Under the pieces are notes generated by a model. The model was not told the origin of the DNA, searched no databases, and saw only the letters and a program-made list of their open reading frames with translations. DNA of 64,000 bases, from positions 412,249-476,248 of the IMG/VR virus record IMGVR_UViG_3300018080_008436, one strand, 5' to 3'. Made by a program: the position numbers and the translations under genes. Below are positions 3,136 through 28,574 of the stretch, piece after piece; the stretch's first letter is position 1, and every line of letters begins with the position of its first letter.

Positions 3136-3721
3136 AGTCGCTTCATACGTTGAGGCATTAAATGTAGCCAATATGGATGGCGAGATAAAGAAACCAGAAG
3201 TGCTTGGAGTTTTGCAATCTCTTCCATCCCCAAATCACATCAAAAGATACTTATCAAATGAAGAAGCAAGAGTCTTGTTTGAAAGCATCCGATGGATTTG
3301 GAAAGAAACAAGTGGTAAAGATATTAGTGAGACATTTAATTTCGAGCCTGCTCCAGAATCATTGCTAGGAAATTACTGGATGCTAAGGAATGGTCTGATC
3401 TTTCATGGTATCAACCATTATGGCATCATTAAAAGAAATATGACGCTCTTTTCTAACGTCCTGAAGTTAGAGCCGTTTGTACTGCATCAGAAGCTTGCAG
3501 GCATACCACAAGACCTAATTAAGTACGTTATAGACAATGGGGGGATGAGAATCTTCGTTACGGCTGACAAAAGAGCATATTTCCAAATGAATGATCAGGT
3601 TTATGCCAATTGGGGTAGGGCCAAAGTTAAAGGACTGGACTTCGGAAACAAAGTGGTCAAACTTGTTGACCCCACTACCCGATTTGACGGTTGGAACTCT
3701 GGAATTACCTTAAAACTCTAG
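3113..3721 (+). CDS. hypothetical protein
   Basis: 202-aa ORF overlapping the cca stop. Confidence 0.7.
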   Translation: MEDVTANEVASYVEALNVANMDGEIKKPEVLGVLQSLPSPNHIKRYLSNEEARVLFESIRWIWKETSGKDISETFNFEPAPESLLGNYWMLRNGLIFHGINHYGIIKRNMTLFSNVLKLEPFVLHQKLAGIPQDLIKYVIDNGGMRIFVTADKRAYFQMNDQVYANWGRAKVKGLDFGNKVVKLVDPTTRFDGWNSGITLKL

Positions 3722-5475
3722 TTCATAAAGAACGGGTCATCATCATCGTCGTCGTCATCAAATTCTACAGGTGGCAGATCTTCCTCAGGATGTTTTCTCT
3801 TAGGTGGCAATGGTTCGTCTTTCGTTGAAGGGCCAAACAATGATGCAAGTTCTGCTTCAAAATCTACATCATCCCATATCAACTCATCAAGATCTTCTTC
3901 TGCACCAGGAGAAAGTGGGTCTGATGGATCAACTTCTGCACCATCGATAGCATCTCCAGTACCTTCATCAATGTCACCAGCATCTTTGTCTTCTTCATCT
4001 GTTTCGGTTTCCCAGAAACCAGTTTCATCCAACTGATCTTTGAATCGATTCAGAATTTCTTTCGCTTCTTCTTGATCACTAATAATATAACTTGATGCTT
4101 CGAAAAGCTCTTGTACTGGTCCAGCACCCATATATCCAACCAATCCTAATCCAACGATATCTTCTGGTTTACATTGCATGAATCTTCTGAAGTTCTCAGG
4201 ACCAATCTGCATTTGCATTTGCTCATTTACCAATTCATCTGATTCTTTTAGAATGGCAATCGCCTCTTCCATCTCCAAAGGACGTTGTCCTCTGCTTGCT
4301 CTAGACTCATTGTCCAATTGGTGATCAGTTGCTTTTGAGAAAATACCCTTGGTAAGTTCCTGACAAATAATAATAAAGTTCATACCTTGAGCTACAGTGT
4401 TACCTTCATCATCATTATGACTCCAACCAGTTCCTTTTTGGCCTAACTGATCAGCCATCATCCTAACCATCTCTGGATCGATGTAATAAAAATGCTGACA
4501 CATCAAATTAGAGAACTTTTCATAAAGTCCTAAGAGTTGAGGATTAATGTCATTGATCGCACCTTGGACTTCTTCCATCTCAGTTACATCAAATAATTCA
4601 TTAAGTCCTGCGCCTTGAGCCAATGAATTCATGATGATGCGTTTGTTAATTTCACCTTCAAGTTCTGGAGTTATTTCAATATCTACTTCTGGGAAGTCTT
4701 CTTCACCTGAAGGACCCATCTCTTCCATATATTTGATTTCTAACTCATCCCTATCAACATTCCATTTACGAGAGATAACGTCTTTTGCGAGGTCCATCAA
4801 CTGCTCTTCATTTCCTTGTTCCAAAGCTTGGATTTCTCTAAGGAGTCCAAGAATCTGCATCATAACTTGTTGAATGTTAGTGTTTACAGGGATATCCTTC
4901 TCTTCTGCAATATTCGTAATATATTCATAGTTTGCGCGAGCTAGTTCATCACCATAATGAGAAAGCACTGGATTTTGAGAAAGGATATTGTTTTGAGGAA
5001 TATCTTGCCAGAAATTTCTTACACCTCTTTGTACTGAGGCATCGTAATCAGCGGCGGCGACCTTCTGTTCAAGAAGACGGATTTCGTAACCACTTATCTT
5101 TTTTTTTAACTCCGAAGTAATGGTCGGCAAGTTATCAGGGGATACTTGTGCGGCCAATGGAAGATCTTCTTCTGGTTCTTCAGCTTTAGGTTTTGGTTGT
5201 ACGATAGGTTTAGGATTACGTGGTCTTCTTTTCCCAGGTTTTCCAGGCTTAGTCTTTTCTCCTGGTGTAGTTCTGGGTTTGGTTGTTGGAGCGGCTGGAG
5301 CAGGTCCTGATCTTTCGGTTGATGGAGCAGGTTCAGCTTCTCTTACCATATCTTCTGCTTGAACAACTAAATTGCCATCTTCGTCTAGCCATCCAGCTTT
5401 TTTACCAAATTCTTCCCAATCTTTTTGAGACAATTTAACGGTCTTTTTGCCATTGGCGTTTTTTATAATTTTCAT
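3718..5475 (-). CDS. acidic hypothetical protein with shared N-terminal leader module; candidate internal virion protein
   Basis: 585 aa; begins MKIIKNANGKKTVKLSQKDWEEFGKKAGWL; AGG-N19-GAA motif upstream. Confidence 0.75.
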   Translation of the reverse strand: MKIIKNANGKKTVKLSQKDWEEFGKKAGWLDEDGNLVVQAEDMVREAEPAPSTERSGPAPAAPTTKPRTTPGEKTKPGKPGKRRPRNPKPIVQPKPKAEEPEEDLPLAAQVSPDNLPTITSELKKKISGYEIRLLEQKVAAADYDASVQRGVRNFWQDIPQNNILSQNPVLSHYGDELARANYEYITNIAEEKDIPVNTNIQQVMMQILGLLREIQALEQGNEEQLMDLAKDVISRKWNVDRDELEIKYMEEMGPSGEEDFPEVDIEITPELEGEINKRIIMNSLAQGAGLNELFDVTEMEEVQGAINDINPQLLGLYEKFSNLMCQHFYYIDPEMVRMMADQLGQKGTGWSHNDDEGNTVAQGMNFIIICQELTKGIFSKATDHQLDNESRASRGQRPLEMEEAIAILKESDELVNEQMQMQIGPENFRRFMQCKPEDIVGLGLVGYMGAGPVQELFEASSYIISDQEEAKEILNRFKDQLDETGFWETETDEEDKDAGDIDEGTGDAIDGAEVDPSDPLSPGAEEDLDELIWDDVDFEAELASLFGPSTKDEPLPPKRKHPEEDLPPVEFDDDDDDDDPFFMN

Positions 5476-5511
5476 AATATCAATATCCTCTAAAAACTAA
5501 TTGATGTTTAA

Positions 5512-5536
5512 TTCCAATTAAGGTAGTAATAATCCT
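5512..5536 (-). promoter_or_regulatory. AGG-N19-GAA putative phage late promoter
   Basis: AGG attattactaccttaattg GAATTA on the minus strand; same spacing recurs at 16 other sites. Confidence 0.7.
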
Positions 5537-5537
5537 T

Positions 5538-6488
5538 TTATGGATTTACTTCTAGCCCCATTCTTGCATATTCTTCTAGATTTATCGCTGGATTTGAGGC
5601 TTTGACTTTTACAAAAGTCGAATGGTCACATTCTTTCCACAAATCTTCTCTATCCTCTCCCCCTTCAAAGATTATCATATCATAATCTATGTGTGCGGGA
5701 GTCATCCACTCTCCATTATGCCAAATCTGGAAATCCACATCTGCATCTCTATATTGGTTCAACTTGTTGATATGGACTTCTGCATAAAGGAAATCTGGTG
5801 GTTTTTCAATTTTTAATGTATATTTATTATAGCCTGCTGGGACTATCCAAGGGTTTTGGAAAACAAAATACAAATCTTTTGAAACTTTTAACAAATCACC
5901 TCTTTGTTGAACCCAATTCCCCTTTTCATACCAATTCTTATTTTGAGAGAATGAAACAATTCCCCTTCTAACAACATTTTGCTTATCCTTATATGTCCCA
6001 TAATATCCTGATTTAGCAATGGGACTGTAAAAAGTCAGATGACTTCCATCGGCCTCCACTTGTCTTCGAGCGTTATTAAAGGCTCTAACTTCTTCATCTT
6101 CCTCTTCTTCAATAGGATCAGCTTCTTGAGGAGCGTTCGGATCAGCTTCTTGAGGAGCGTTCGGATCAGCTTCTTGAGGAGCGTTCGGATCTATCCCTGC
6201 CAGAAGTTGAGCATTTCGTTCTCTCTCCAATAATTCAAAAAGATCATCTGGTTCATCTATGTCTGGAATTTTCATTTTTCCATCTTTCAACGCATCGTCT
6301 ATTTGTTCTGGAGTTAGAGGTTTTTTATAACCTTTTATCTTCCCTTGTTTATCAAGTACTGGTTGCCTTTCTTCTTGCGTCCAGCCTATTTCTTTTAGCC
6401 TATTCTGATATTCTTTACATTCTATATAGTCTGCTCTTTGAGCCTCTTTAAGAAAAGAATAAAATTCAAATTGCTTGTACCAACTCAT
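5538..6488 (-). CDS. hypothetical protein with WY-type leader (MSWYKQ...LKEAQ) and DPNAPQEA repeats
   Basis: 316-aa ORF with AGGAGA SD. Confidence 0.75.
   Translation of the reverse strand: MSWYKQFEFYSFLKEAQRADYIECKEYQNRLKEIGWTQEERQPVLDKQGKIKGYKKPLTPEQIDDALKDGKMKIPDIDEPDDLFELLERERNAQLLAGIDPNAPQEADPNAPQEADPNAPQEADPIEEEEDEEVRAFNNARRQVEADGSHLTFYSPIAKSGYYGTYKDKQNVVRRGIVSFSQNKNWYEKGNWVQQRGDLLKVSKDLYFVFQNPWIVPAGYNKYTLKIEKPPDFLYAEVHINKLNQYRDADVDFQIWHNGEWMTPAHIDYDMIIFEGGEDREDLWKECDHSTFVKVKASNPAINLEEYARMGLEVNP
6115..6191. repeat. 3 x 24-bp perfect coding tandem repeat (DPNAPQEA)
   Basis: ggatcagcttcttgaggagcgttc x3. Confidence 0.9.
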
Positions 6489-6504
6489 AGAATCTCCTAA
6501 AAAC

Positions 6505-6912
6505 TTATAACATCATTAAATCACTAAAATCTGTATCTTCTCTTTCAGGTGGGTTACAAAGTTCCTCAAGCTGTTCTACAGAAAGGCTTGGCTTAATATT
6601 GTCAAGTCCTCTGAACTCAACAACTTGATCGGTCCCCTTGTTTTTAAGAACTATGGCGTAAAGATCTCCACTAATGAAGTAAACGGATATATCATTTCTA
6701 GCAAGATATTCTCTGGCATAAGATTCTGACTGGACACTCCAACCACCTTCTTGACCCAGTTCCATTAGTCTTTTTACACCTGTAACATCTTCTTTCGTAA
6801 AATTGAAGTTTCTGTTTGCAGTTTTTAGCCAACCAGATTTCTGACCCATGACCAACCACTCTTTTTTAGACATTTGAACTGTTGTCTTTCCAGCTTTTCT
6901 AACTAGTTTCAT
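6505..6912 (-). CDS. hypothetical protein with shared N-terminal leader module
   Basis: MKLVRKAGKTTVQMSKKEWLVMGQKSGWLKTA. Confidence 0.75.
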   Translation of the reverse strand: MKLVRKAGKTTVQMSKKEWLVMGQKSGWLKTANRNFNFTKEDVTGVKRLMELGQEGGWSVQSESYAREYLARNDISVYFISGDLYAIVLKNKGTDQVVEFRGLDNIKPSLSVEQLEELCNPPEREDTDFSDLMML

Positions 6913-6915
6913 TAT

Positions 6916-7197
6916 TTACTCCTCAACATTAGCAACATCTTTTTCAGATGGTGCTTGGCCATGTTCCAGATGCATTTTCATTGCATCACGTAGCTTGAAT
7001 TTATCTGTATATCTAACAGTAATTACTCCACCTGGATAAATGAGGTCCCAGCAGATTTCACCATCACAATCTTTATTCCTAATCATCCCTCCAGCATCAC
7101 GCCATCTGTCGATTAGTTCTTCCATTTCTCTTCTAAAAACAAAGACATCATTCTCTCTTTGTAAAAATGGCATCGCTATTTTAATAATCTTCATCAA
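6916..7197 (-). CDS. hypothetical protein with MKIIKIA leader
   Basis: 93-aa ORF; promoter motif at 7230-7254. Confidence 0.65.
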   Translation of the reverse strand: MMKIIKIAMPFLQRENDVFVFRREMEELIDRWRDAGGMIRNKDCDGEICWDLIYPGGVITVRYTDKFKLRDAMKMHLEHGQAPSEKDVANVEE

Positions 7198-7229
7198 ATA
7201 TCCCCAAATGAATTGCTTATTCTAATTTA

Positions 7230-7254
7230 TTCTTCAATATCAACCATCTAACCT
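7230..7254 (-). promoter_or_regulatory. AGG-N19-GAA putative late promoter
   Basis: AGG ttagatggttgatattgaa GAATAA. Confidence 0.65.
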
Positions 7255-7264
7255 TCATTAACAC

Positions 7265-7291
7265 AAAAAAAGCCCCTTGATTTCAAGGGGC
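7265..7291 (-). terminator. rho-independent terminator
   Basis: GCCCCTTG/CAAGGGGC stem followed by a U-tract on the minus strand. Confidence 0.8.
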
Positions 7292-7371
7292 AGAAATAAT
7301 GCTCTGTCATTCAGGGAAGCAAAAATAATGCCTTATTCCCAAACAGCATCCATAAGTTCATATATTTATTT

Positions 7372-7947
7372 TTATTTATTCTCGCAGACATCTATTAACT
7401 CATAGATTAAATCTTTTTGATCATCTGTGAATTTCCATCGGACATTAACATTTTTGTCTGCCCAGTCTTTTGCGCTATTACCTTTCTCTTGCCCCATACT
7501 GACCCAATCAGCCACCATTTCAGCTATGTCAATGTCCCCCATCTTAGTGCCATCAATCATTTTTTCGGGTGGTTTGTCTCTATCATTTCTGTTGATGAGA
7601 TCGACCGTTTCAGATGAATGAAACTCTGGATGATGCCTATTACTTTTTACATGATGCTCAGTAGCTTTATTCATCTTTTCATCCATCCCATCTGGCGGTT
7701 CCCAGTCTACACCATCATCTTTGCATTTATAACTCCATGTTACATAAAGATATGGTTCATACTCTGGATCTTCAAATTTACTATCGTCATGATGACTGGC
7801 CTGTTCGATAAGGTCTTCGAATTTGTCATCGTAGTCAGCAATCTTTTTGCAGTATTTCTGAACTCGCTTGATATGTTCTCTAGTTCTTTTTTCAAAGAAC
7901 TCTTCTATTTCTTTCTTCTCACTTTTCGCTGTCCTGATTAATTTCAT
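7372..7947 (-). CDS. HD-like phosphohydrolase (DUF5662-like) with MKLIRTA leader
   Basis: RTREHI..V, HHDDSKF, HHVKSNRHHPEFH and EMVADW motifs; start 7947 after GGAGG. Confidence 0.65.
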   Translation of the reverse strand: MKLIRTAKSEKKEIEEFFEKRTREHIKRVQKYCKKIADYDDKFEDLIEQASHHDDSKFEDPEYEPYLYVTWSYKCKDDGVDWEPPDGMDEKMNKATEHHVKSNRHHPEFHSSETVDLINRNDRDKPPEKMIDGTKMGDIDIAEMVADWVSMGQEKGNSAKDWADKNVNVRWKFTDDQKDLIYELIDVCENK

Positions 7948-7965
7948 TGTAATACCTCCATGATT

Positions 7966-8001
7966 ATTATACAAAAAACCCCTTGTAGAGACAAGGGGTT
8001 T
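7966..8001 (-). promoter_or_regulatory. terminator hairpin with an embedded sigma70-type promoter (TTGTCT-17-TATAAT)
   Basis: AACCCCTTGT/ACAAGGGGTT stem plus U-tract; -35 at 7989-7994, -10 at 7966-7971. Confidence 0.7.
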
Positions 8002-8018
8002 AGATGTACACAGAAAGC

Positions 8019-8333
8019 TTATTTTTCTGGTTTGGGTTGTGGAGGTTGGGGTCTGCCTTTTCCATGGCCTCTCATGCCTTTTCCAGGGCCATTACCATGT
8101 CTTCCCCTCATGCCTTCACGATGACGCTTCATCCTTTCTTTCATCATAGCAGTTAACTCTGAACGATCTAACTTACCATCTTTGTCAACGTCAAAGTTTT
8201 CCATGACTCTGTCCAATACCTTTTCCAAACACTTCTCTGGACTTGGACGTTCAGGGCGTTCGGGTCTCTCGGTTTCTTGGGCTGAAAGAGTGCAGGCAAA
8301 AACTAGGGCGAGTAATACGATTAATGCTTTCAT
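8019..8333 (-). CDS. secreted EF-hand protein
   Basis: Signal peptide MKALIVLLALVFACTLSA; EF-hand loop FDVDKDGKLDRSEL; Gly/Pro/Arg-rich tail; start 8333 after AAGGAG. Confidence 0.75.
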   Translation of the reverse strand: MKALIVLLALVFACTLSAQETERPERPERPSPEKCLEKVLDRVMENFDVDKDGKLDRSELTAMMKERMKRHREGMRGRHGNGPGKGMRGHGKGRPQPPQPKPEK

Positions 8334-8370
8334 AATAAGATCTCCTTTATTAAGCAATGAATTTGTTAAC

Positions 8371-8385
8371 GCAAGTGCTGTGCCA
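8371..8385 (-). promoter_or_regulatory. sigma54 (RpoN) -24/-12 promoter
   Basis: TGGCAC-AGCAC-TTGC matches the -24/-12 consensus spacing, 38 nt upstream of the EF-hand start. Confidence 0.7.
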
Positions 8386-8459
8386 AATGTTTTATTGGGT
8401 AAATGGTCACTATAGTGCGCAAATATTAGAATTTTGGTAAAAATAGTGCGCAAAATATG

Positions 8460-8795
8460 CTATCTAAACTCATTTCCCCATTTGTCGAGGTTTTCGTATG
8501 GTATTGTAAACAAATAATCTTCAACTTTGCTTGAACGTGTCCCAAAAGAGACATCATAATATATCCCATCACATTTGACTAAAGCGTGGTTAACTCCATC
8601 CTTTCTACAAACAACAACATCTGCTTTGTATCCCGCTTCTCTTAATGCTTTGCAATACCTTCCACACAGATTACTGCAATCATTGGCATTGGGAATCTTC
8701 TTTTCTTTATTAAGTGACCAGAAAATATCTGGTAATGGTATTTTTTGAAAATTTAGTAATTTGTATAAGAACGATTTGAACCATTTCATGATCAC
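8460..8795 (-). CDS. small transglutaminase/papain-fold-like protein
   Basis: DCSN...NHALV...YYDV putative Cys-His-Asp arrangement. Confidence 0.5.
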   Translation of the reverse strand: MIMKWFKSFLYKLLNFQKIPLPDIFWSLNKEKKIPNANDCSNLCGRYCKALREAGYKADVVVCRKDGVNHALVKCDGIYYDVSFGTRSSKVEDYLFTIPYENLDKWGNEFR

Positions 8796-9212
8796 TTAAC
8801 ATTCGTATGATGTCCTCTTTTCATACTCTGGGCTTCTAGAATAGCTCGTTATAAATACATCAGGGTAATTAGCACCGAATTGATCTGCCGTAATGTCAAT
8901 TATTACCTTATTGTTTAATTCAACCCAGCAATGGTAACTCTTCATACAGTTCCCGCAAACTTTTTTGGCATCGAACCCTCTTTTATTAAGTTCTGCGCAC
9001 AATTCTTCGCTCATCATTTCACAGAATGGAGGAGATAGGAATTTTCCCCCGCTAAGAATTTCGTCTAACCGTTCTCTTTTTTCATCATCGTTGTCATAAT
9101 CTTCATTAACTTCTTCAAGTAGCTCTGAAACATATTCATCCATCATTCTTTCTCTGATCTCTGAAGCGATCTCAAAAATAATCCCCATTCTTGCTACTTT
9201 AATGATTTTCAT
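8796..9212 (-). CDS. transglutaminase/papain-fold-like protein (DITADQF family) with MKIIKVA leader
   Basis: FCEMMS...YHCWVEL...IIDITADQF; start reassigned to 9212. Confidence 0.6.
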   Translation of the reverse strand: MKIIKVARMGIIFEIASEIRERMMDEYVSELLEEVNEDYDNDDEKRERLDEILSGGKFLSPPFCEMMSEELCAELNKRGFDAKKVCGNCMKSYHCWVELNNKVIIDITADQFGANYPDVFITSYSRSPEYEKRTSYEC

Positions 9213-9213
9213 A

Positions 9214-9495
9214 TTAACCAAGAGTATCTTGAACTCTGTCCTCTCGTAACCAAAATTCTCCACTTCCACCAACAGGTTTCAATTTATATTGTGTCCTGCC
9301 GAACATTTTACGTTTACTAAGAACTTCAACAGGAAAGAAAACAGAAGTTGACCCTCTTCCAATTTCATAAAACTGAGCATATTTTATTTGTCCAACTTCG
9401 CTCTCATCCAGTTCCATCTCTTCTGGCACTTTTCTTTCTGGCTCTTCCTTCTGTGGCATAGGAGGAATTACTTGAGCCGCCTTCATTATTTTCAT
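9214..9495 (-). CDS. hypothetical protein with MKIMKAAQ leader
   Basis: 93-aa ORF coupled to its neighbours. Confidence 0.65.
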   Translation of the reverse strand: MKIMKAAQVIPPMPQKEEPERKVPEEMELDESEVGQIKYAQFYEIGRGSTSVFFPVEVLSKRKMFGRTQYKLKPVGGSGEFWLREDRVQDTLG

Positions 9496-9920
9496 TATCC
9501 ATCTCCTTTTATTATCTCGAATCCATTATCTAACCAACCTGCAACTGGAACTCCTTCAACAGGAGAGATGCCCATGCCAAATTTCAAAGAGACGACATCA
9601 TATCCAAGCATTCTCAAAAGAACCAAAGCTTGACTGGAAGTATGACCAACATAACAAACAAGAAGAATCTTTTTGTCTTTAGGTAATTTATCCAGGTTCT
9701 CTTTTTCTAATAAATCTAGCCAGAAAATGTTCTCTGCTCCTTCGATATGCCCTTCAGCAAAGTCTTCGGGCTTTCTTATGTCTAAGATGAAGAAGTTATC
9801 CAAGCCTTTTTCCTTCAACTCAACAGGAGTGATGTAGTTCCAAGTATCGTCTGTTTTGTCAATGAACTCTTTCAGCTTTTCCGTGAAAGTTAGATCGCAT
9901 GATATTTTTATGAGCTTCAT
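9495..9920 (-). CDS. rhodanese-domain protein with MKLIKIS leader
   Basis: ILDIRKPEDFAEGHIEGAENI; active-site loop VCYVGHTS; LRMLGY...GW. Confidence 0.85.
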   Translation of the reverse strand: MKLIKISCDLTFTEKLKEFIDKTDDTWNYITPVELKEKGLDNFFILDIRKPEDFAEGHIEGAENIFWLDLLEKENLDKLPKDKKILLVCYVGHTSSQALVLLRMLGYDVVSLKFGMGISPVEGVPVAGWLDNGFEIIKGDG

Positions 9921-9958
9921 TCACCCTTCCTTAATTCATAAGTATAGTCTTATTATAC

Positions 9959-9983
9959 TTCTAAATAAGGTGTTAGTATCCCT
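9959..9983 (-). promoter_or_regulatory. AGG-N19-GAA putative late promoter
   Basis: AGG gatactaacaccttattta GAAGTA. Confidence 0.6.
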
Positions 9984-10073
9984 ACACAAAAATACCCCCT
10001 GAGGCGAACCTAAGCAAGTCCATCGCAAGCGATATACTCGCTTTGAGACGAATCCCAAGGGGCAAATACTAAG

Positions 10074-10427
10074 TTACCTGTTGGGTTTTATGACTATTAC
10101 ATCAAAAACTCCACTATTTTGATCATTAGCTTCATCTAATGAATCTATGTCAGGGGACATTCGCTCTACGGAATCTATGTGTCGCTCATCAGGTGTTATT
10201 TCCTCTAAGGAATCGACATACTGCTCATCAAACTCTTCTAAACTATCTGTAACTTTCATGACAACTTGGCGATTTTCTATTTCATCCCAAATGTCACTAA
10301 GATCGTTATGACTTTCTACGAAACCTAAGCTTCCAACTCTCATTTGGGTATTAGTATCAGTATTGTGTATGTAAATTACCCCAGTTTCATAAACCCTCAG
10401 TTCACAATTCCTAATGATTATTTCCAC
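10074..10427 (-). CDS. hypothetical protein
   Basis: 117-aa ORF, GTG start after AGGAG. Confidence 0.6.
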   Translation of the reverse strand: MEIIIRNCELRVYETGVIYIHNTDTNTQMRVGSLGFVESHNDLSDIWDEIENRQVVMKVTDSLEEFDEQYVDSLEEITPDERHIDSVERMSPDIDSLDEANDQNSGVFDVIVIKPNR

Positions 10428-10457
10428 TTTTGGCTCCTAGTTTATTACAGTAATCCT

Positions 10458-10709
10458 TTATTCACCTTCTCTGTACCTTCTTCTTTCCAAACATCTATTG
10501 TAATTGTCTCGATAATTTAACTCTATGTCAGGATTTGGCAACAATCTAAGATTGACACTAATCTGGGTTATAATATCCTCTATGCTATCCCCAATTAGTA
10601 CTTGCTTACCTTGTTCAACATTGCACGCAATATAATCTTCCACCAAATTTTCCTCTATCTCGCCAAGAACCTGAAATCCATTAAAAATAGTTACTAGCGT
10701 CTTCTTCAT
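10458..10709 (-). CDS. hypothetical protein
   Basis: 83-aa ORF with GAGG SD and TGTATAAT upstream. Confidence 0.6.
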   Translation of the reverse strand: MKKTLVTIFNGFQVLGEIEENLVEDYIACNVEQGKQVLIGDSIEDIITQISVNLRLLPNPDIELNYRDNYNRCLERRRYREGE

Positions 10710-10843
10710 GATTTAACCTCTTTATGCTACTTACCATAAGGACATTATACAGATAACCTTGATTCATTTTTCTCTTGTAAAAAGCAACATTTTTCCACCT
10801 GGACTCTTACTATCAGAGATTCTGGTTTTCAAGCAAAATCGAC

Positions 10844-10879
10844 AAAAAAAATGCCCCTTGGGACGAATCCCAAGGGGCA
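10844..10879 (-). terminator. rho-independent terminator with UUCG loop
   Basis: TGCCCCTTGGGA-TTCG-TCCCAAGGGGCA plus U8. Confidence 0.85.
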
Positions 10880-10919
10880 AATATCTTTTACGAAATATCT
10901 ACAGAGTAGGTGTAAATAA

Positions 10920-11318
10920 TTAGCTGTCTTGAATTCCTTCTCTTGCTTTTTGGAGTTTGTCCATTAGCATTTGGTGTTCTTCAGGAGTAGGTTCCTCTGG
11001 AACTATGTCTTCCATTTCGTCATGCTCAAACAAATCCCAAAGCCCTTGCCTTTTTAATTGCTCTTCTATTATAGCCGCACGGAATTTATTGCATTTACCT
11101 TCGAAATAATCATCTACTTCAGCCAAATCAAGTGGTTGGTTTATAGCATCTTGGAAAATTTTTCTGAACCTGGCTAATACAGCTTCTGTACCTCCATCCC
11201 AATCTCCTTCCAAATCGTTTGCTTTTTTCATCCACCCAGCCTTCTTCCCCATATCAGTCCACTCTTTGCGAGTCATCTTAATCCTAGTTTTTCCACCAGC
11301 AGTTTTAACTATTTTCAT
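10920..11318 (-). CDS. hypothetical protein with shared N-terminal leader module
   Basis: MKIVKTAGGKTRIKMTRKEWTDMGKKAGWMKKA; AGG-N18-GAATAA at 11354-11377. Confidence 0.75.
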   Translation of the reverse strand: MKIVKTAGGKTRIKMTRKEWTDMGKKAGWMKKANDLEGDWDGGTEAVLARFRKIFQDAINQPLDLAEVDDYFEGKCNKFRAAIIEEQLKRQGLWDLFEHDEMEDIVPEEPTPEEHQMLMDKLQKAREGIQDS

Positions 11319-11397
11319 TTTAATCTCTCCATTAAGGTCTTAATTCTAATTTATTCAAAATCTTTTCTTTTGATCCTTTAATCAGCAGTAATTGTTA

Positions 11398-11925
11398 TTA
11401 AGCCTTTGCCCAAGCCAAGCCTACCCCATTTACACCTAAAGCATTTTTACATGCTTCTATCGTTGTACCTTTAGTTATTACATTATCAACAAAATAAACA
11501 TTCTTGTTGTCTAAATCCATAACGTCTGCATCATCTCTGACAATCATATTGTGCTCTTCAACCGTGTAATTAGGAAGATTTTGCTTTCTCCTTTGATGAG
11601 ATGGTTCTATACTAGAAGACCGACCCAATGGATCATATATCTCAGATCCAGTTATTTTAGCAATTGCCTCGCATAAAAGCATGTTTGACCCCCTATCCCC
11701 TGATGATGATGGAACTGGTACTAAGAGGCTATTAGATGCAACATATTTCGCCATAGTATCAGCCGCTATCTTAATGGCATCTGAATTTTTGTTCTTTATT
11801 TCGTAAGATATCTTTCTAACAAAAGCTTCTTGCTGTGATAGTTCTCTTCTTCTAGGAGAAATATATTGATAAATGGCTATATTTTTGCCATCATTTAAAA
11901 ATTGAGCTTTTTTATACCAGTTCAT
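11398..11925 (-). CDS. phosphoribosyltransferase-fold (ComF-like) protein with MNWYKKAQ leader
   Basis: LLVPVPSS and PRPP-binding loop VYFVDNVITKGTT. Confidence 0.75.
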   Translation of the reverse strand: MNWYKKAQFLNDGKNIAIYQYISPRRRELSQQEAFVRKISYEIKNKNSDAIKIAADTMAKYVASNSLLVPVPSSSGDRGSNMLLCEAIAKITGSEIYDPLGRSSSIEPSHQRRKQNLPNYTVEEHNMIVRDDADVMDLDNKNVYFVDNVITKGTTIEACKNALGVNGVGLAWAKA

Positions 11926-11936
11926 AACAATATTAA

Positions 11937-12035: not shown

Positions 12036-12899
12036 TTAGCTACCAGCGGTAACTGTGACCTTGGCTACTGCGTAGGTATTGATGATTACAATACCAACTT
12101 CCTCATAAATTACCCAACCGAGGCGGAGCTTCTTTGGATCGTCTGCTGGGAGGACGGTGATATCCTGACGAATCGGGAATGCACCAACGTACTCAGCAGG
12201 AGCGAGCAAGAAGACGGTATCGGTAGGCATCTTTGAAGATACGTGAATATCAGCAGTAAAGAGATGTCCGAACAAACCAGTTGTAAGAACTTCTTTCTGT
12301 GTTGCTTCATCATAGACAGTCTTACCAAATCCACGAATGTCAGCGTAACGAAGAGCATGCATAACAAGCTTACCTACTGTGAGGTCGTGCTGTTCGATGG
12401 TTGCGAAAGCTTGGTTCAAGGCGTTAAGGGTAAGAGCACCACCAGTTGAAACAACGGTATGTGCGGCATCAATTGCGGCGGCGATAGCGTTGAAGATGTT
12501 AAGATCTTCTTCCTTCTGAATCGCTTCTTTAGCTTTGATCTGAGCACGGTCTACAATGTAGAATCTACGAGCTTTAATCTCACTCAAGCGAATAGTAGGA
12601 TTGGTTGCAATCTCGAACGTAGGAACGAGAATTTCTTCACCTTCGGTAATACCATCAGGTACAGCGCCACGACGAGGAATAACCTGGGCGGTCTGGCGAA
12701 CGTCTTTCTCGTAACGTGCATAAGCGCCCTGAGGAAGCTCATCCACCATGAGAAGTTTACGTCCAACTGCTTGATATTCCAATGCTCTACGAATTGGCTC
12801 GACCATGGCCTGAGCCAATGCTACTCTACCTTCAGGTGTCTCAAGCGCCTGAGCGATAAGAGCTTCTCTTTCTGCATTAACAGATCTTTTATTAATCAT
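12036..12899 (-). CDS. major capsid protein (HK97 fold)
   Basis: 287 aa; spine-helix-like DRAQIKAKEAIQKEEDLNIF; C-terminal GWVIYEEVGIVIIN..AV; follows protease/scaffold and decoration genes; strong SD and codon bias. Confidence 0.85.
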   Translation of the reverse strand: MINKRSVNAEREALIAQALETPEGRVALAQAMVEPIRRALEYQAVGRKLLMVDELPQGAYARYEKDVRQTAQVIPRRGAVPDGITEGEEILVPTFEIATNPTIRLSEIKARRFYIVDRAQIKAKEAIQKEEDLNIFNAIAAAIDAAHTVVSTGGALTLNALNQAFATIEQHDLTVGKLVMHALRYADIRGFGKTVYDEATQKEVLTTGLFGHLFTADIHVSSKMPTDTVFLLAPAEYVGAFPIRQDITVLPADDPKKLRLGWVIYEEVGIVIINTYAVAKVTVTAGS

Positions 12900-14370: not shown

Positions 14371-17300
14371 TTAACGTTGGTCGTTGTCAATCAAGTTGTC
14401 ATTTAACAACTTGGAACCAATCGTAAACGCTCCAGCGATTTTGTCCTGGAAGCTAGGCTCCTGGGCAGGCTGTGATTGAATTACGATAGCTGGAAGACCA
14501 GTTCCAGCAGTTTTAACTTGCTGTTCAGTAGAAGCAGTTTTAACGGCCTTAACTGGGAACATAGTTTCCGCAACTGAAGCAATTTTATCAACTTCAAACT
14601 GAGCTAATGCAGTAACAACATTATCAAATGTGCTCTTATCAGAAGCAATTCTGTTGTTAGCGGCTAACCATGAAGCAGTACGAAGAGCTTCCTCTTTACG
14701 TGCTTCCTTGATTCTAGCAAGTTGTTCTTCTCTTTTCTGTTGTACCTGTTTGAGATACTTATCATTGATGCCAGGCATATCTGACTGAGTTTCCTTCTCA
14801 ACGCCCATATAAGCGTTATCGATAGGTACATCAGGCTTAGGTGCGTTAACGTCGATGTTATCTGGTCCTTCCTGTCCCATAGTAGCTTTTGCTCTAGGAA
14901 CGTCTGGATTTGCCATCTTTACATCGATGTTGTCAGCGCCTTCATGACCCAAAGAAGCATCGGCTCTAGGAACTCCAGCTTCAACATCACCCTCAACGGT
15001 GTCAACTTCTTTCATCTTTTTCGCTAATGCAAGCTGTCTCTGAGCCTCTTTGAGGTTTTTCTCAGCTTCAGCAATTACAGTACCTTTAATCTCATTATTG
15101 ATTGCAGGCATATCTGATTGAGTAGCTTTCTCAATTCCCATGTAGGAACTATCAACAGCTACGTCTGGCAGACCAGCAGGTGGATTAATGTTATCTGCGC
15201 CTTCATGGCCCATGGTAGCATTAGATCTAGGAACCTGAGGTTTGGCCATAGGAACGTCAATATTATCTGCTCCTTCATTCATCATAGTTGCCTTACTACG
15301 AGGTACTCCAGCTTCAACGTCTTTCTCAATAGTTTTGATGAGCTTAGGCTTACCTGCCAACTTAATGTTGGACTCAGCGCCAGAGCGTCTTACTCTTGAG
15401 GAATTCATTGCCAAAGCCTCTGCAAGTGCGTCGGTATCAAATGTTTCCATATCTTCTCCTTCTGGAACTTCTTCAGCTTCAAATGCAACGTCCTCTGCGA
15501 TGTCCTCTTCCAAGGCTTCATCACCAGTATTTTCAACAACTTCGAGGTTGTCTCCAGTGATGGTTACAGATTCAACTGCGACTTCTTCTGGTTCTTCAAT
15601 AATCTCATCAACCTCTACATCGACTGAGTCGAGTGGTTCGAGATCATCTCCGATTTCAACTTCTTCCAAGATAGCCTGAGCTTTCTTGGCTAAGTTTTCT
15701 TCTTTCTGAATGAACAATTCGTTCATTGTAGCGAGATCGTATTGGCTAAGTGCAATCTTTCCTTCTTTTGCTTCATCAGCAAAAGCTTGGACGTAAATGT
15801 TATCAGATTCTTCTTTAGCGAACTTCTTCTTAATGCAGTTGCAAATTGAAGTTGCTTGAACAACATCATGTCCTTTGCTCTTTTGATCTTCAATACATTC
15901 ATCCATTGGATCTACTTGCATTAAAGTGTCAGCCAATTTTTTCATTTGACGGACTTTGGTAAAACCAAGTCTCTTCAGTTCTTTGCATACGCATTCAGCC
16001 AATGGCTTATCTTTGCAAGGACCGAATCTAGCTACAGTGTTTCCACCATAAGTTCTAGCAATTCTTTCAACGCAGTTAGCAGTTGGGAACGTATCGGCGT
16101 TAGCCTGAGCAGTCTTCAACATTCCAACAACCTTAAGCTTAGAAGCGAACTTCCTTGCTTCTTCTTTGCATTCTGGGCAACTATTGTCAGGAGAAAGATC
16201 CCATTCAACTCTTAACAAGCCGTTTGAAGGATTCTTACTACTAACAATGAGGTTCTTCTCGAAAGAAGTTCCGCATTGTCCGCATTCGCATTTGGTGCGA
16301 CCATCGCCGCTTGCGATGACATCACATTTCTTATTTCCGCAAGCTGGGCAGACATCGCCATGGGCCTCTCTGTTAGCGGCAATACGAACAATAGAATCTT
16401 TATCAATTCTAGTTTGAGCGGCAACTGGAAGTGCTGGCATTTCTTCAGGCTCTTCAGGGCCTTCAACGTCTTCCATACCTTCTTCGCCAACGCTTTTGGT
16501 AGGTTTGATGATTCTAAATTCAATTTCTTTCTTAATGAGAGCTTCGTATTCGGCTCCGCAATTCTGGCAGTTACCGATAATTCCACCGTCATCTTCTTTA
16601 GTTACATCAACATCAGATGAACCACACTCTGGGCAAATGCTCCAAGGAGCTTGCTTTTCGCCAACAGTTGGGATCTCATCCTCTAACTCATCCTCATTAC
16701 CAGTGGTGAGAGCTTGAAGAGCAGGATCTTCTCCCATTGGAGGAGCGTCAAGACCTTCCTCAGGAGCGCCTGGAGCGGCGACTTCGCCTGCGGCCCCTGG
16801 CATTCCGCCACCCATTGGTGACTGAGCAGTTCTTTTCATCTTCTTATTATTATAGGCAACCTGATTAAGGTTTTCCATTTCAATATCAGCGTCAAGTCCG
16901 TCCTCAATGCCTTCTCCTACGAGATCGCCTTCAGGAACGATTTCTTCTTCAATTGGTGCTACTTCTTCGCCAATCGGAATTTCAACTGACTCTTCGCCAG
17001 CATCAGTCTGGACAGCGATTTGAATGGTATTACCATCAATAGTAACATTAGTGATAGAAGCAAGCTTCATATTTTCAGTTGCTAAAGCGCCTTTAGCAAA
17101 CTTAACGATATCTTTCTTGAAAGTGGCAGAAGTCTTTTGAGAACCAAGTTCTTCGAAATCGGTTTCAATTACGATGTCTGCTCCATCAAGTTTTTCAGGA
17201 TTAAGAATTTCTTCCTGAGCCTGGACTCGCTTTCTTGATTCCAAAGAAGCTAGAATTTCTTCTCTTTCAGCATCTCTTTTAGCCTTTTCGTTTTTAACGA

Positions 17301-17460
17301 CAGCTTTGGTTGATGCTTCTTTAGTTTCTTTCTTCTCTTCTTTTTCTTCGCATTCTTCATCCTCTTCGTCACACTCTTCTTCTCCAGCGACAGCTTGCTT
17401 CAGAGCATTTCTAAGTTCGTCCTTAACGTTAACTTTTGCTACTGTAGAGGCTTCAGCAGT
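14371..17460 (-). CDS. C-terminal scaffold/core part of the prohead protease-scaffold protein (Zn-ribbons, internal repeats); reached by a -1 shift
   Basis: Frame is open 72 codons upstream of the TTG at 17244, up to ~17463, with no ATG/GTG; many CxxC pairs; repeated VEAGVPR...EGADNID units. Confidence 0.7.
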   Translation of the reverse strand, partial: TAEASTVAKVNVKDELRNALKQAVAGEEECDEEDEECEEKEEKKETKEASTKAVVKNEKAKRDAEREEILASLESRKRVQAQEEILNPEKLDGADIVIETDFEELGSQKTSATFKKDIVKFAKGALATENMKLASITNVTIDGNTIQIAVQTDAGEESVEIPIGEEVAPIEEEIVPEGDLVGEGIEDGLDADIEMENLNQVAYNNKKMKRTAQSPMGGGMPGAAGEVAAPGAPEEGLDAPPMGEDPALQALTTGNEDELEDEIPTVGEKQAPWSICPECGSSDVDVTKEDDGGIIGNCQNCGAEYEALIKKEIEFRIIKPTKSVGEEGMEDVEGPEEPEEMPALPVAAQTRIDKDSIVRIAANREAHGDVCPACGNKKCDVIASGDGRTKCECGQCGTSFEKNLIVSSKNPSNGLLRVEWDLSPDNSCPECKEEARKFASKLKVVGMLKTAQANADTFPTANCVERIARTYGGNTVARFGPCKDKPLAECVCKELKRLGFTKVRQMKKLADTLMQVDPMDECIEDQKSKGHDVVQATSICNCIKKKFAKEESDNIYVQAFADEAKEGKIALSQYDLATMNELFIQKEENLAKKAQAILEEVEIGDDLEPLDSVDVEVDEIIEEPEEVAVESVTITGDNLEVVENTGDEALEEDIAEDVAFEAEEVPEGEDMETFDTDALAEALAMNSSRVRRSGAESNIKLAGKPKLIKTIEKDVEAGVPRSKATMMNEGADNIDVPMAKPQVPRSNATMGHEGADNINPPAGLPDVAVDSSYMGIEKATQSDMPAINNEIKGTVIAEAEKNLKEAQRQLALAKKMKEVDTVEGDVEAGVPRADASLGHEGADNIDVKMANPDVPRAKATMGQEGPDNIDVNAPKPDVPIDNAYMGVEKETQSDMPGINDKYLKQVQQKREEQLARIKEARKEEALRTASWLAANNRIASDKSTFDNVVTALAQFEVDKIASVAETMFPVKAVKTASTEQQVKTAGTGLPAIVIQSQPAQEPSFQDKIAGAFTIGSKLLNDNLIDNDQR

Positions 17461-27545: not shown

Positions 27546-28574
27546 TTATCCTAAATGTTTCTTCAACTCTTCAGTGAAGTGGTCACTAACCATTCTAGAA
27601 GGAGCGGCCTTGGTTTCTTCCCAAGTCCTATTTTCAGATTTAGTTTCTCTCTGAATAGAAGCTTTTCTAGTTTCGTTCTGCTGAGCTAAACTCTCACCAG
27701 CAGTTTTCTCAGGAAGATTTTTGAGGTCAGCTTCGCTATAAGCTCCCATGAAGCTACTACTAACTCCAGAGCCAACGTTCCCAACCTCAGTTGGGAAGAC
27801 AACACCTTGAGCCTCAAATCCATCAGCTTGCATTTCAGCGACCTTTTCTTCCTGCCAAGCTTGATGCTCTCTTTCTCTTTTCTTGGATCTTTCAAAATTA
27901 TCAAAGACAAGCTTTTCGCCAGGAGTGAATGTTTCACTTTCTTCAAGCCTTTCAATGGCCCCAGGATCGGCAATAGAATTCTGATTAGGAGCAAGGCTAG
28001 GTTGATTAGCAATTCTGTAATCCTCTCCACCTCTAATAGGACAAATACCTCCAAGCATAGCAACACCTGGAGCATCGCCTAATTTAGCCTCAGGAGCAAC
28101 CTGTTGCCAATTTGCTTCTTTCATGTGGTCCATATTTGTTCTTTCATCGATATGGAACGGATCGCCAAGAACTTCTTTCAGAGCTTCTTCCATTGTGGAA
28201 GTCTGAGGTTCTGCACTGGCAGTCTTAACCATTTGTTCAGATGAAGCCGTTCTCTCTACTACGGATGTAGGATCAATTCCAACAATTCGGTCTGTACCAA
28301 GTCCACATACAGAAGCGAACTCTTTAAGATGACGAACGTCTCTTTCAGACCAAGTTGAGTTATAGTAATAAGGTTGGTTGTTGGACGCACATTTCTCTAT
28401 TTGTTCACATTCTTCGAACAAGCACATCTCATCAACCTTAGAAGCGGCTGTGACATTAAGCCTATCAATGCCAGCTTGAAGCAGTCTTTCATTCTCTTCT
28501 ACTGCTTCTAAGTATGTTCCTGCGGTAACCCAATCAGGGACGTTATGAACATCTTGTGTTCTATTAATTTTCAT
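27546..28574 (-). CDS. hypothetical head-associated protein
   Basis: 342 aa; VERTAS, MVKTAS, EKTAG; tandem AGG-N19-GAA sites upstream. Confidence 0.7.
   Translation of the reverse strand: MKINRTQDVHNVPDWVTAGTYLEAVEENERLLQAGIDRLNVTAASKVDEMCLFEECEQIEKCASNNQPYYYNSTWSERDVRHLKEFASVCGLGTDRIVGIDPTSVVERTASSEQMVKTASAEPQTSTMEEALKEVLGDPFHIDERTNMDHMKEANWQQVAPEAKLGDAPGVAMLGGICPIRGGEDYRIANQPSLAPNQNSIADPGAIERLEESETFTPGEKLVFDNFERSKKREREHQAWQEEKVAEMQADGFEAQGVVFPTEVGNVGSGVSSSFMGAYSEADLKNLPEKTAGESLAQQNETRKASIQRETKSENRTWEETKAAPSRMVSDHFTEELKKHLG

What the first reader, a model, noticed from the sequence alone, without database searches (positions are those of the whole stretch)
3718..11318. A ~30-aa N-terminal module reused on three unrelated proteins
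Seen: MKIIKNANGKKTVKLSQKDWEEFGKKAGWL (5475), MKLVRKA-GKTTVQMSKKEWLVMGQKSGWLKTA (6912) and MKIVKTAGGKTRIKMTRKEWTDMGKKAGWMKKA (11318) share the consensus MKxxKxA..K..vkmS.keW...GkKaGW. Two end in K-x-A before an unrelated body. The three bodies (585, 135 and 132 aa total) show no further similarity. Inference: a shuffled propeptide or targeting domain, a longer version of the short leader.
Basis: partly seen in the sequence, partly recalled or inferred. Interest (0 to 1): 0.8.

Follow-up and report, generated by a model that had tools for sequence, protein, structure and literature searches.

The report
Shared N-terminal leader domain in megaphages
Three unrelated proteins of an uncultivated 0.5-Mb phage related to Bacillus phage G start with the same ~33-residue basic mini-domain, which also heads more than a thousand protein families in related megaphages and nothing else, and which probably works as a protease-trimmed tag that loads cargo proteins into the capsid.

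Summary
Three genes (3718-5475, 6505-6912, 10920-11318, all minus strand) begin with a 30-34-aa module that is 47-56% identical pairwise (E 1e-7 to 1e-11). Their bodies show no significant similarity.

A profile search of 1.84 billion proteins found 1378 cluster representatives. In 149 of the 150 listed proteins the module sits at the N-terminus; 145 bodies fall into 106 unrelated groups. The consensus is MKLVKTASGKxTIKMSKKEWxxIGKKAGWMKEAQ.

The module is absent from 185,579 species genomes, from 50,697 deposited phage records, from Pfam, PHROGs and NCBIfam, and from the searched literature. Carriers are phage-G-like megaphages, where module genes form tandem arrays, in five loci inside the head-gene block.

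AlphaFold predicts a basic beta-hairpin plus helix (pLDDT 85).

Residues 4-8 of the module (VKTAS) and its end (WMKxA-Q/N) match a motif, h-K-x-A-S/Q. This motif is about 14-fold enriched in head-region proteins. It conservedly flanks the assemblin-fold prohead protease domain of a ~1870-aa protease-scaffold polyprotein.

Best reading (inferred, not shown): a capsid-targeting propeptide domain, analogous to the T4 capsid targeting sequence, trimmed by the prohead protease.

The parts
11217..11318 (-). Module copy on the 132-aa protein (MKIVKTAGGKTRIKMTRKEWTDMGKKAGWMKKAN)
   Evidence: predicted beta-hairpin + helix
10920..11318 (-). 132-aa module-bearing gene; the body is an ORFan
   Evidence: Body homologues only in near-identical contigs; no Pfam, PHROG or NCBIfam hit
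6814..6912 (-). Module copy on the 135-aa protein (MKLVRKAGKTTVQMSKKEWLVMGQKSGWLKTAN)
6505..6912 (-). 135-aa module-bearing gene; the body is an ORFan
5377..5475 (-). Module copy on the 585-aa protein (MKIIKNANGKKTVKLSQKDWEEFGKKAGWLDED)
3718..5475 (-). 585-aa gene: module, Pro/Lys-rich linker, acidic body. Orthologues P0143, P0151 and P0152 keep the module. P0153 lacks it and starts MSKVHISNSTIKFKKKAQ
17439..19940 (-). N-terminal part of the protease-scaffold polyprotein: assemblin-fold prohead serine protease domain (about residues 48-220)
   Evidence: PHROG 18299 E 1.9e-19; NCBIfam prohead-protease fusion E 4e-4; AF2 model pLDDT 85, best PDB matches are herpesvirus proteases, probability 0.97-0.99; His and Ser invariant in 34 orthologues
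19857..19871 (-). IKTAS motif before the protease domain (putative cleavage site)
   Evidence: Conserved as h-[KR]-x-A-[SA] in about 50 orthologues of 29-56% identity
19185..19199 (-). IKTAA motif just after the protease domain (putative self-release site)
   Evidence: Conserved in the closer relatives (10 of the 11 with 50-56% identity); a KxA site lies in the same linker in the remote ones
14371..17244 (-). C-terminal, scaffold-like acidic part of the polyprotein; carries 7 h-[KR]-x-A-[SQNA] motifs (0.8 expected)
   Evidence: forms one ORF with the protease in relatives
12036..12899 (-). Major capsid protein, 55% identical to phage G gp27; marks the head-gene block
11398..11925 (-). 175-aa gene with the alternative short leader MNWYKKAQ. 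It lies with the 132-aa module gene between two strong terminator-like hairpins
7372..7947 (-). DUF5662 gene with short leader MKLIRTA. Orthologues start MKIIKIA or MSWYKTAS, so the leader flavours are interchangeable
26786..26800 (-). Internal VKTAS (context NKLVKTAS, the same as the module start) in a conserved 443-aa head-block protein
28215..28229 (-). Internal VKTAS in a conserved 342-aa head-block protein
31723..31737 (-). VKTAS near the N-terminus of a conserved 224-aa head-block protein

Best explanation
The module is a portable N-terminal propeptide domain of phage-G-like megaphages. It is a highly basic (net about +6) beta-hairpin-plus-helix mini-domain fused to many unrelated, mostly acidic, small proteins. 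Proposed mechanism (inferred): during prohead assembly the module docks its cargo onto the acidic protease-scaffold core. The assemblin-fold prohead protease then cuts at h-K-x-A|S/Q motifs. One motif lies in the hairpin loop of the module (VKTA|S, residues 4-8). In about half of carriers a second lies at the module's C-terminal edge (W-M-K-x-A|Q/N). Cutting frees the cargo inside the capsid, from where it could be ejected with the DNA. The 'short leader' MK[IL][IV]K.A found on neighbouring genes is the minimal form of the same signal. SHOWN: the module exists, is under protein-level selection, is N-terminal, sits on more than 100 unrelated bodies, and is restricted to this phage clade. Also shown: it is often encoded inside the head-gene block, and its two ends match a motif that is strongly enriched in head proteins and conserved on both sides of the protease domain. 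INFERRED: cleavage, capsid targeting and ejection.
For: Distribution: 1378 representative proteins at E<=1e-3 and 144 at E<=1e-10; 149 of the top 150 carry the module at the N-terminus.

Bodies: 145 bodies fall into 106 BLAST clusters, 113 of 149 are acidic, and the module has net charge +6. Pfam hits on bodies are scattered singletons such as zinc ribbons, sigma-70 region 4 and Lar.

Selection: within one tandem array the modules are 76-94% identical in protein, but only 48-90% of conserved residues share a codon.

Fold: AF2 gives pLDDT 85, strands 2-5 and 11-14 and helix 17-27. Residues 6-10 (TASGK) form the loop, and the tail 31-36 has low confidence.

Motif in the window: h-[KR]-x-A-[SQNA] occurs 30 times against 9.2 expected, concentrated in head-block proteins. 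[VI]KTAS occurs five times, including NKLVKTAS.

Motif across relatives: in 79 related loci [LIVM][KR]TA[SAN] occurs at 3.05 per 10,000 aa in long coding-strand ORFs, against 0.21 expected and 0.18-0.28 in other frames. The motif is conserved before and after the protease domain in about 50 orthologues. Polyproteins carry 534 sites against 113 expected.

Protease: assemblin fold, fused to the scaffold as in herpesvirus pUL26, whose R and M sites are cut after Ala (YLQA-T, VQA-S; PMC4498786).

Genomic position: module genes are inserted at five different intergenic positions inside the conserved portal-protease-scaffold-MCP block, always co-oriented. Arrays of six and four consecutive module genes exist.

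Interchangeable leaders: a 585-aa orthologue lacking the module starts ...IKFKKKAQ. DUF5662 orthologues swap MKLIRTA, MKIIKIA and MSWYKTAS.

[quoted passage not shown] SPN3US has N-terminal propeptides of 20-254 residues removed by the prohead protease (PMC10052503).
Against: There is no proteomic or biochemical evidence of cleavage or packaging for any member. The closest cultured relative, phage G, lacks the module and has only short-leader-like N-termini. The h-K-x-A match in the hairpin loop could instead reflect structural needs of a beta-turn. Only about half of modules have the second K-x-A site, and the 585-aa family lacks it. About 10% of carriers have internal or C-terminal copies, which a pure N-terminal signal does not need. 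Some module genes lie outside the head block (L011, L012). Strong terminator-like hairpins separate the 132-aa gene's unit from the capsid gene. The fold prediction for a 36-residue peptide is unvalidated and has no structural match.
Confidence: 0.5

Rival explanations
1. The module is a retained, uncleaved adaptor mini-domain. This small basic beta-beta-alpha fold would bind a common partner, such as DNA/RNA or a phage or host hub protein, and bring many different effector bodies to it. It would have no role in capsid loading.
For: It is confidently predicted as an autonomous fold with a hydrophobic core and many conserved lysines (net +6). It occurs in tandem, internally and even at the C-terminus in about 10% of carriers. 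Several bodies are nucleic-acid-binding types (zinc ribbons, sigma-70 region 4). Half of the modules lack the second K-x-A site.
Against: This does not explain why Met1-Lys2 and the first strand are nearly invariant and identical to the short leader on other genes. It also does not explain why the same motif flanks the protease domain and is about 14-fold enriched in head proteins. No similarity to any known DNA-binding family was found.
Confidence: 0.25
2. The three genes, and the wider family, are members of one expanding paralogous family made by tandem duplication. The C-terminal bodies have diverged or been replaced beyond recognition. The N-terminus is kept for a generic reason such as oligomerisation or stability, not as a targeting signal.
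For: Tandem arrays of four to six adjacent module genes of similar small size exist. The bodies of the 132-aa and 135-aa proteins are ORFans.
Against: Body lengths range from 0 to 552 aa, with different Pfam domains and 106 unrelated clusters among 145 bodies. The 585-aa family is an old orthologous group that has the module in some phages and a short KKAQ leader in another. This shows the module is gained and lost independently of the body.
Confidence: 0.12
3. The leader, short and long, is an N-terminal recognition tag (degron) for a phage-encoded AAA+/ClpP machine. It would control timed degradation or unfolding of the tagged proteins.
For: The window encodes a ClpP (54370-54942, E 1e-52) and a conserved AAA ATPase inside the head block (28957-30981). 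N-terminal Met-basic-hydrophobic motifs are known ClpX tags (from memory, not tested).
Against: Internal copies of the motif that conservedly flank the prohead protease domain and populate the scaffold are not explained by an N-degron. No ClpX-type unfoldase was identified.
Confidence: 0.08
4. The similarity is chance, low-complexity lysine richness, or a nucleotide-level feature such as translation-initiation optimisation or a recombination hotspot.
For: The N-termini are AT-rich and Lys-rich, and MK starts are common.
Against: Pairwise E-values reach 1e-11 and profile hits 1e-24 against 1.8 billion proteins. Trp20, Gly28 and Trp29 are invariant. Synonymous sites have diverged. The short leader occurs 40 times on the coding strand against once on the other strand, and it is absent from the 36-64 kb genes of the same genome.
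Confidence: 0.01

Closest known systems
T4 capsid targeting sequence (CTS) on the internal proteins IPI/IPII/IPIII and the variable IP loci of T-even phages
   Same: A conserved N-terminal leader is shared by otherwise unrelated, fast-evolving small proteins. In T4 it directs them into the scaffolding core, and propeptides are removed by the prohead protease (PMC3012670; PMC10052503). Here too, diverse bodies share only the leader, genes form variable clusters, and the leader contains the motif found at putative protease sites.
   Different: The T4 CTS is described as a short linear peptide; its ~10-residue length and L/I-x-E cleavage motif are from memory. This module is about 33 residues, predicted to fold (beta-beta-alpha), strongly basic, uses an h-K-x-A motif and can be repeated within a protein. 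There is no sequence relation. Packaging is unproven here.
N-terminal propeptides of giant-phage head proteins (SPN3US gp245 and phiKZ-type protease substrates)
   Same: Many head and ejection proteins carry N-terminal propeptides of 20-254 residues removed at a recurrent motif, and the protease removes its own C-terminal propeptide (PMC10052503). Here a recurrent motif lies after N-terminal leaders and directly after the protease domain.
   Different: In SPN3US the propeptides are protein-specific, not one conserved shuffled module. The cleavage motif differs: in SPN3US cleavage follows a P3-P2-P1 motif with Val preferred at P4 and Ser at P1'; that P1 is Glu (A/S/G-X-E) is recalled from memory. 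Here the putative P1 is Ala.
Herpesvirus pUL26 protease-scaffold fusion with release (R) and maturation (M) sites
   Same: An assemblin-fold serine protease is fused to its scaffold and cuts itself out after Ala (YLQA-T, VQA-S; PMC4498786). The window's protease model matches herpesvirus proteases best. It is fused to a scaffold-like region in relatives and is flanked by h-K-T-A-S/A motifs.
   Different: The relationship is at fold level only (about 10% identity, TM about 0.3). The herpesvirus system is not known to use a shared leader module on cargo proteins.
Encapsulin cargo-loading peptides
   Same: A short conserved tag on diverse cargo proteins directs them into an HK97-fold shell.
   Different: In encapsulins the tag is usually C-terminal (from memory), linear and not protease-removed, and there is no phage context. 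This is an analogy only and was not tested.

Membership tests
T4-type capsid targeting sequence / internal-protein system | A conserved N-terminal leader shared by otherwise unrelated proteins | tested here: met
   149 of 150 top hits are N-terminal; 106 unrelated body clusters; the three window bodies are unrelated
T4-type capsid targeting sequence / internal-protein system | The leader ends in, or contains, the prohead protease cleavage motif and is removed at maturation | tested here: inconclusive
   The module start and end match h-K-x-A-S/Q, which flanks the protease domain and is about 14-fold enriched in head-region ORFs. Actual cleavage cannot be tested with these tools
T4-type capsid targeting sequence / internal-protein system | The tagged proteins are packaged in the capsid and ejected | not testable with these tools
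   Needs virion proteomics or reporter encapsidation
T4-type capsid targeting sequence / internal-protein system | Sequence homology to T-even CTS or internal-protein families | tested here: not met
   No PHROG or Pfam family matches the three proteins; no tblastn match in 50,697 phage records
Assemblin/HK97-type prohead protease with fused scaffold (the proposed processing enzyme) | Herpesvirus-protease fold with conserved catalytic His and Ser | tested here: met
   AF2 pLDDT 85; the top PDB hits are HCMV, VZV, PrV and HSV-2 proteases, probability 0.97-0.99 but TM only about 0.3; His75 and Ser126 invariant in 34 orthologues; PHROG head maturation protease E 1.9e-19
Assemblin/HK97-type prohead protease with fused scaffold (the proposed processing enzyme) | Protease and scaffold encoded as one polyprotein with self-cleavage sites | tested here: inconclusive
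   There is a single ORF of about 1700-2480 aa (mostly 1800-2040) in 65 relatives and in a 99.98%-identical contig. Conserved K-x-A motifs flank the protease. Cleavage itself is untested
Sec/Tat/lipoprotein signal peptides | A hydrophobic core of about 10 or more residues after a short basic N-region | tested here: not met
   Direct reading of the consensus: charged residues are spread throughout and there is no hydrophobic stretch; net charge +6
RiPP precursor leader peptides | A short leader on a short core peptide, with modifying enzymes encoded nearby | tested here: not met
   Bodies reach 552 aa with a median of 93. Neighbours are head-assembly genes, not modification enzymes
Known small DNA-binding folds (zinc-finger beta-beta-alpha, AbrB/SpoVT, RHH) | Profile or structural match; metal ligands for zinc fingers | tested here: not met
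   No Pfam hit; no PDB sequence-profile hit at E<=10; Foldseek and VIA-align gave nothing significant; no conserved Cys or His

The most novel reading that the evidence does not exclude
The module is a true folded cargo-loading domain, not just a linear tag. It would mark the complete packaged and ejected effector repertoire of a whole clade of uncultivated megaphages, with more than 100 unrelated bodies in over 1,300 protein clusters. A protease-cut 'release switch' in its hairpin loop would let the cargo go. If so, one 33-residue profile would read out the injected proteome of these phages directly from metagenomes.
Probability: 0.35. Interest if true: 0.8.

Novelty: new variant of a known kind. 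Interest (0 to 1): 0.68.

Why it matters
Megaphages related to phage G are almost entirely uncultivated, and most of their genes are unannotated. A single, very well conserved N-terminal domain on over a thousand otherwise unrelated protein families is a rare handle on function. If it is a capsid-loading propeptide, it predicts which proteins these phages carry into the cell, which are likely host-takeover and anti-defence factors. It also predicts the specificity of their prohead protease (after Ala in h-K-x-A). Finally, it offers a compact natural tag for loading foreign proteins into very large capsids. Even if the mechanism is different, the module is an undescribed, virus-restricted mini-domain that deserves a family entry.

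Tried and rejected
- The word-index homology search with the 132-aa protein (region 1-40) returned only the protein itself. The exhaustive profile search was needed.
- tblastn of the window module and of a consensus-like module (P0065:1-36) against 50,697 phage records gave nothing significant. Phage G does not have the module.
- Megablast of the region against the phage records gave no match.
- Pfam, PHROGs and NCBIfam have no family for the module or for the three bodies.
- Foldseek against PDB, VIA-align wide and a PDB sequence-profile search found no meaningful match for the 36-residue model.
- ESM Atlas look-alikes were uninformative for the module and for the 585-aa body.
- Two scans of 185,579 species genomes gave no true hit. 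The single DNA-pattern match, in Mangrovivirga, is out of frame with stops.
- Full-text searches for the peptide strings (KKAGWMK, WYKKAQ, MKIIKTA and others) found no paper.
- I found no paper on phage G prohead processing in the library.
- Rejected ideas: signal peptide, RiPP leader, chance or low complexity, nucleotide-level element (see the rivals and the membership tests).
- The looser motif W[YMLIFV][KR].A[QNS] is not clearly enriched on the coding strand (14 against 9). Only the N-terminal M[NS]W[YF]K.A[QNS] cases are noteworthy.

Full report
WHAT THE WINDOW IS. The 64-kb window is 36-44% G+C, and from about 3.7 to 50 kb nearly all genes lie on the minus strand. It belongs to an uncultivated megaphage. 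Its own proteins map to a 524,692-bp contig. IMG/VR holds contigs of 476 kb and 296 kb that are 99.98-100% identical over a 5.7-kb stretch compared. The major capsid protein (12036-12899) is 55% identical to Bacillus phage G gp27. The gene order portal, protease, scaffold, decoration, capsid parallels phage G. IMG/VR contains at least 170 related capsid genes at 63-100% identity, on contigs up to 548 kb.

THE OBSERVATION. All three ATGs have Shine-Dalgarno-like motifs upstream.
- Similarity is confined to residues 1-30/36: 47-56% identity, E 1e-7 to 1e-11. The bodies give nothing significant.
- A three-sequence profile finds only these three copies in all six frames.
- A degenerate DNA pattern finds only three matches in the near-identical 476-kb contig.
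- Codon comparison shows the conservation is at the protein level.

HOW WIDESPREAD IT IS. A profile of the three modules, run without a word index against 1.84 billion representative proteins, found 1378 proteins at E<=1e-3 and 144 at E<=1e-10.
- Among the 150 listed, 149 carry the module within the first 16 residues, and nearly all of these start at Met1. Fifteen have one or two further internal copies. Internal copies read ...PIKLIKKANGK..., so they are true repeats and not missed gene starts.
- The consensus is MKLVKTASGKxTIKMSKKEWxxIGKKAGWMKEAQ. In a 52-sequence alignment M1, G9, W20, G28 and W29 are invariant. K2, K5, A7, K10, K14, S16, G24 and A27 are conserved at 90% or more.
- Conservation stops abruptly after the module. 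The next residues are [MLI]-K-x-A in about half of the cases.
- The 145 bodies of at least 30 aa form 106 BLAST clusters. The median body length is 93 aa (range 0-552), 113 of 149 bodies are acidic, and the module has a mean net charge of +6.
- Pfam recognises only scattered single domains in the bodies: zinc ribbons, sigma-70 region 4, Lar, GvpG and PGDYG.

WHERE IT IS NOT.
- No match in 50,697 deposited phage records, including phage G.
- No relative in one genome each of 185,579 bacterial and archaeal species.
- No Pfam, PHROG or NCBIfam family.
- No solved structure by sequence profile.
- No paper containing the peptide strings.

WHO CARRIES IT. Most IMG/VR contigs carrying the module (11 loci) also encode homologues of the window's head-block or neighbouring proteins at 25-93% identity; L012 and several short contigs gave no such match. 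Module genes lie on the coding strand, often in arrays. L010 has six consecutive genes (89-139 aa) with near-identical modules and unrelated bodies; L012 has four. Module genes are inserted at five different intergenic positions of the otherwise syntenic portal-protease-scaffold-capsid block (L010, L013, L016, L017, L019). In the window they lie just downstream of the capsid gene. Two loci place them elsewhere (L011, L012). Within 10 kb of the capsid gene the module is common only in the sub-clade with at least 90% capsid identity, plus three more distant loci.

STRUCTURE. AlphaFold2 with the 52-sequence alignment gives mean pLDDT 85. It predicts strand 2-5, loop 6-10, strand 11-14 and helix 17-27, with a less confident tail at 31-36. 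No structural neighbour is significant, as expected for 36 residues. This is a prediction only.

THE LINK TO THE SHORT LEADER AND TO THE PROTEASE. Eleven further genes between 3.7 and 14.3 kb begin with a short leader.
- These genes begin MK[IL][IV][KR].[AS] or M[NS]WYK.... Two more such genes lie at about 26-36 kb. No gene between 36 and 64 kb does.
- Across 80 related loci this short leader occurs 40 times on the coding strand and once on the other strand.
- Phage G has MKRLIKKAS, MKRLISKTAA and LKRLIKKSN N-termini.
- The module's first eight residues are this leader.

The same motif also occurs inside head proteins.
- In the window, h-[KR]-x-A-[SQNA] is found 30 times against 9.2 expected. 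Seven sites are in the scaffold-like 957-aa protein (0.8 expected). [VI]KTAS occurs five times, once as NKLVKTAS.
- In long coding-strand ORFs of 79 related loci, [LIVM][KR]TA[SAN] occurs at 3.05 per 10,000 residues. Composition predicts 0.21, and other frames give 0.18-0.28.

The motif brackets the protease domain.
- The 833-aa protein carries a prohead protease domain: PHROG 18299 at E 1.9e-19 and an NCBIfam prohead-protease fusion at E 4e-4.
- Its AlphaFold model (pLDDT 85) matches herpesvirus assemblins best, with probability 0.97-0.99 although TM is only about 0.3. One His and one Ser are invariant in 34 orthologues.
- In about 50 orthologues of 29-56% identity, an h-[KR]-x-A-[SA] motif is conserved just before the protease domain. 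One or two more are conserved just after it, within otherwise variable sequence.
- In relatives, and in the 296-kb near-identical contig, protease and scaffold form one ORF of about 1870 aa. These ORFs carry 534 motif sites in 65 sequences against 113 expected.
- This is the architecture of herpesvirus pUL26, which cuts itself after Ala at its R and M sites (PMC4498786).

The module therefore carries one such motif in its predicted hairpin loop (KTA-S, residues 5-8). In about half of the carriers a second sits at its flexible C-terminal edge (W-M-K-x-A-Q/N). That second motif is also the stand-alone leader MNWYKKAQ of the neighbouring 175-aa gene.

Leaders are interchangeable between orthologues. 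The 585-aa family keeps the module at about 70% identity while its body is only 36-40% identical. One homologue instead starts MSKVHISNSTIKFKKKAQ. The DUF5662 orthologues start MKLIRTA, MKIIKIA or MSWYKTAS.

INTERPRETATION. The simplest model that accounts for all of this is a capsid-targeting propeptide system analogous to the T4 capsid targeting sequence. [quoted passage not shown] The model is also analogous to the protease-removed N-terminal propeptides of giant-phage head proteins (PMC10052503). The difference is that the tag here is a folded, strongly basic mini-domain, reused on more than 100 unrelated, mostly acidic bodies. I put this at about 0.5. The distribution, the conservation, the motif sharing and the genomic association are shown. 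Cleavage, docking to the scaffold and ejection are inferred.

The main rival (0.25) is a retained adaptor or nucleic-acid-binding mini-domain. The internal and tandem copies and the frequent absence of the second site favour it. Lesser rivals:
- a duplicating paralogous family (0.12);
- a degron for the phage's own ClpP/AAA proteins (0.08; ClpP at 54370-54942, AAA ATPase at 28957-30981);
- chance (0.01).

NOVELTY. The principle, a shared N-terminal leader on diverse phage proteins, is known from T4. This module, its size and predicted fold, its motif, its scale (1378 cluster representatives) and its restriction to uncultivated phage-G-like megaphages appear undescribed in the libraries and literature searched. 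I rate it a new variant of a known kind.

Noticed in passing
window ~17457 (between ORFs 14371-17244 and 17439-19940, minus strand): The window and the 476-kb IMG/VR contig lack one T (GAAAAACTGCTG against GAAAAACTTGCTG) relative to the 99.98%-identical 296-kb contig L031. This splits a protease-scaffold polyprotein into 833 + 957 aa. The polyprotein is a single ORF of 1869 aa in L031 and of about 1700-2480 aa in 65 relatives. The cause could be an assembly error, a natural variant or a frameshift site; which one is unresolved.
   Followed up: partly
window 3718-14262 (minus strand), plus 26210-27457 and 33679-36063: Thirteen genes start MK[IL][IV][KR].[AS] or M[NS]WYK... . They include a rhodanese (9495-9920), a DUF5662 protein (7372-7947) and a 794-aa nucleotidyltransferase-like protein. 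No gene at 36-64 kb does. Orthologues swap MKIIKIA and MSWYKTAS. Phage G has similar N-termini (gp13, gp17, gp38).
   Followed up: partly
window 54370-54942 (+) and 28957-30981 (-): The phage encodes a ClpP protease (Pfam E 1e-52) next to a VWA-domain protein (53583-54281). It also encodes a conserved 674-aa AAA ATPase embedded in the head-assembly block. Neither role is known.
   Followed up: no
window 44276-47779 (-): A 1167-aa ribonucleotide-reductase-like protein (weak RNR class II insertion-domain match) is interrupted by an intein with a LAGLIDADG homing-endonuclease domain.
   Followed up: no
window 23946-26174 (-): The portal protein has an extra C-terminal region (residues ~630-734) that matches HNH-endonuclease-type PHROG families. 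Several relatives have much longer portal and protease ORFs, suggesting inteins or insertions.
   Followed up: no
window 14371-17244 (-): The scaffold-like protein contains zinc-ribbon motifs (CPECGSS...CQNCG, CPACGNKKC...) and a repeated unit of about 45 aa (VEAGVPR.KATM..EGADNIDV...). It is very acidic.
   Followed up: no
window 8019-8453 (-): A small EF-hand protein preceded by a signal-peptide- or lipoprotein-like sequence (MKALIVLLALVFAC...). This is an unusual secreted calcium-binding protein for a phage.
   Followed up: no
window 1108-3135 (+) and 33679-36063 (-): There is a CCA-adding/poly(A)-polymerase-family enzyme with an HD domain, and a second 794-aa protein with a weak nucleotidyltransferase head domain at its C-terminus. 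In relative L010 the six-gene module array sits immediately after the homologue of the 794-aa protein.
   Followed up: partly
window 58752-61835 and 61895-63943 (-); 5538-6488 (-): Two large proteins begin with long Ser-rich repeats (SSSSRDSSSS..., SQSESSQSESS...). The 316-aa protein has three tandem DPNAPQEA repeats.
   Followed up: no
window 11977-12004, 10852-10879, 7976-8001, 7272-7291 (minus strand): Four strong terminator-like hairpins (8-12 bp stems followed by T-runs). The first lies directly after the capsid gene and the second directly after the 132-aa module gene. Together they define a two-gene unit (11398-11925 plus 10920-11318).
   Followed up: no
P0002, P0008, P0018, P0038, P0056, P0058; L015:3374-4726, L018:1354-2670: A sub-family has two or three modules per protein. 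In these the module is followed by a glycine-rich, possibly membrane-active stretch (GFWDNVQQVGKGVKGIGQGAWNAGAGIVGILGN).
   Followed up: no
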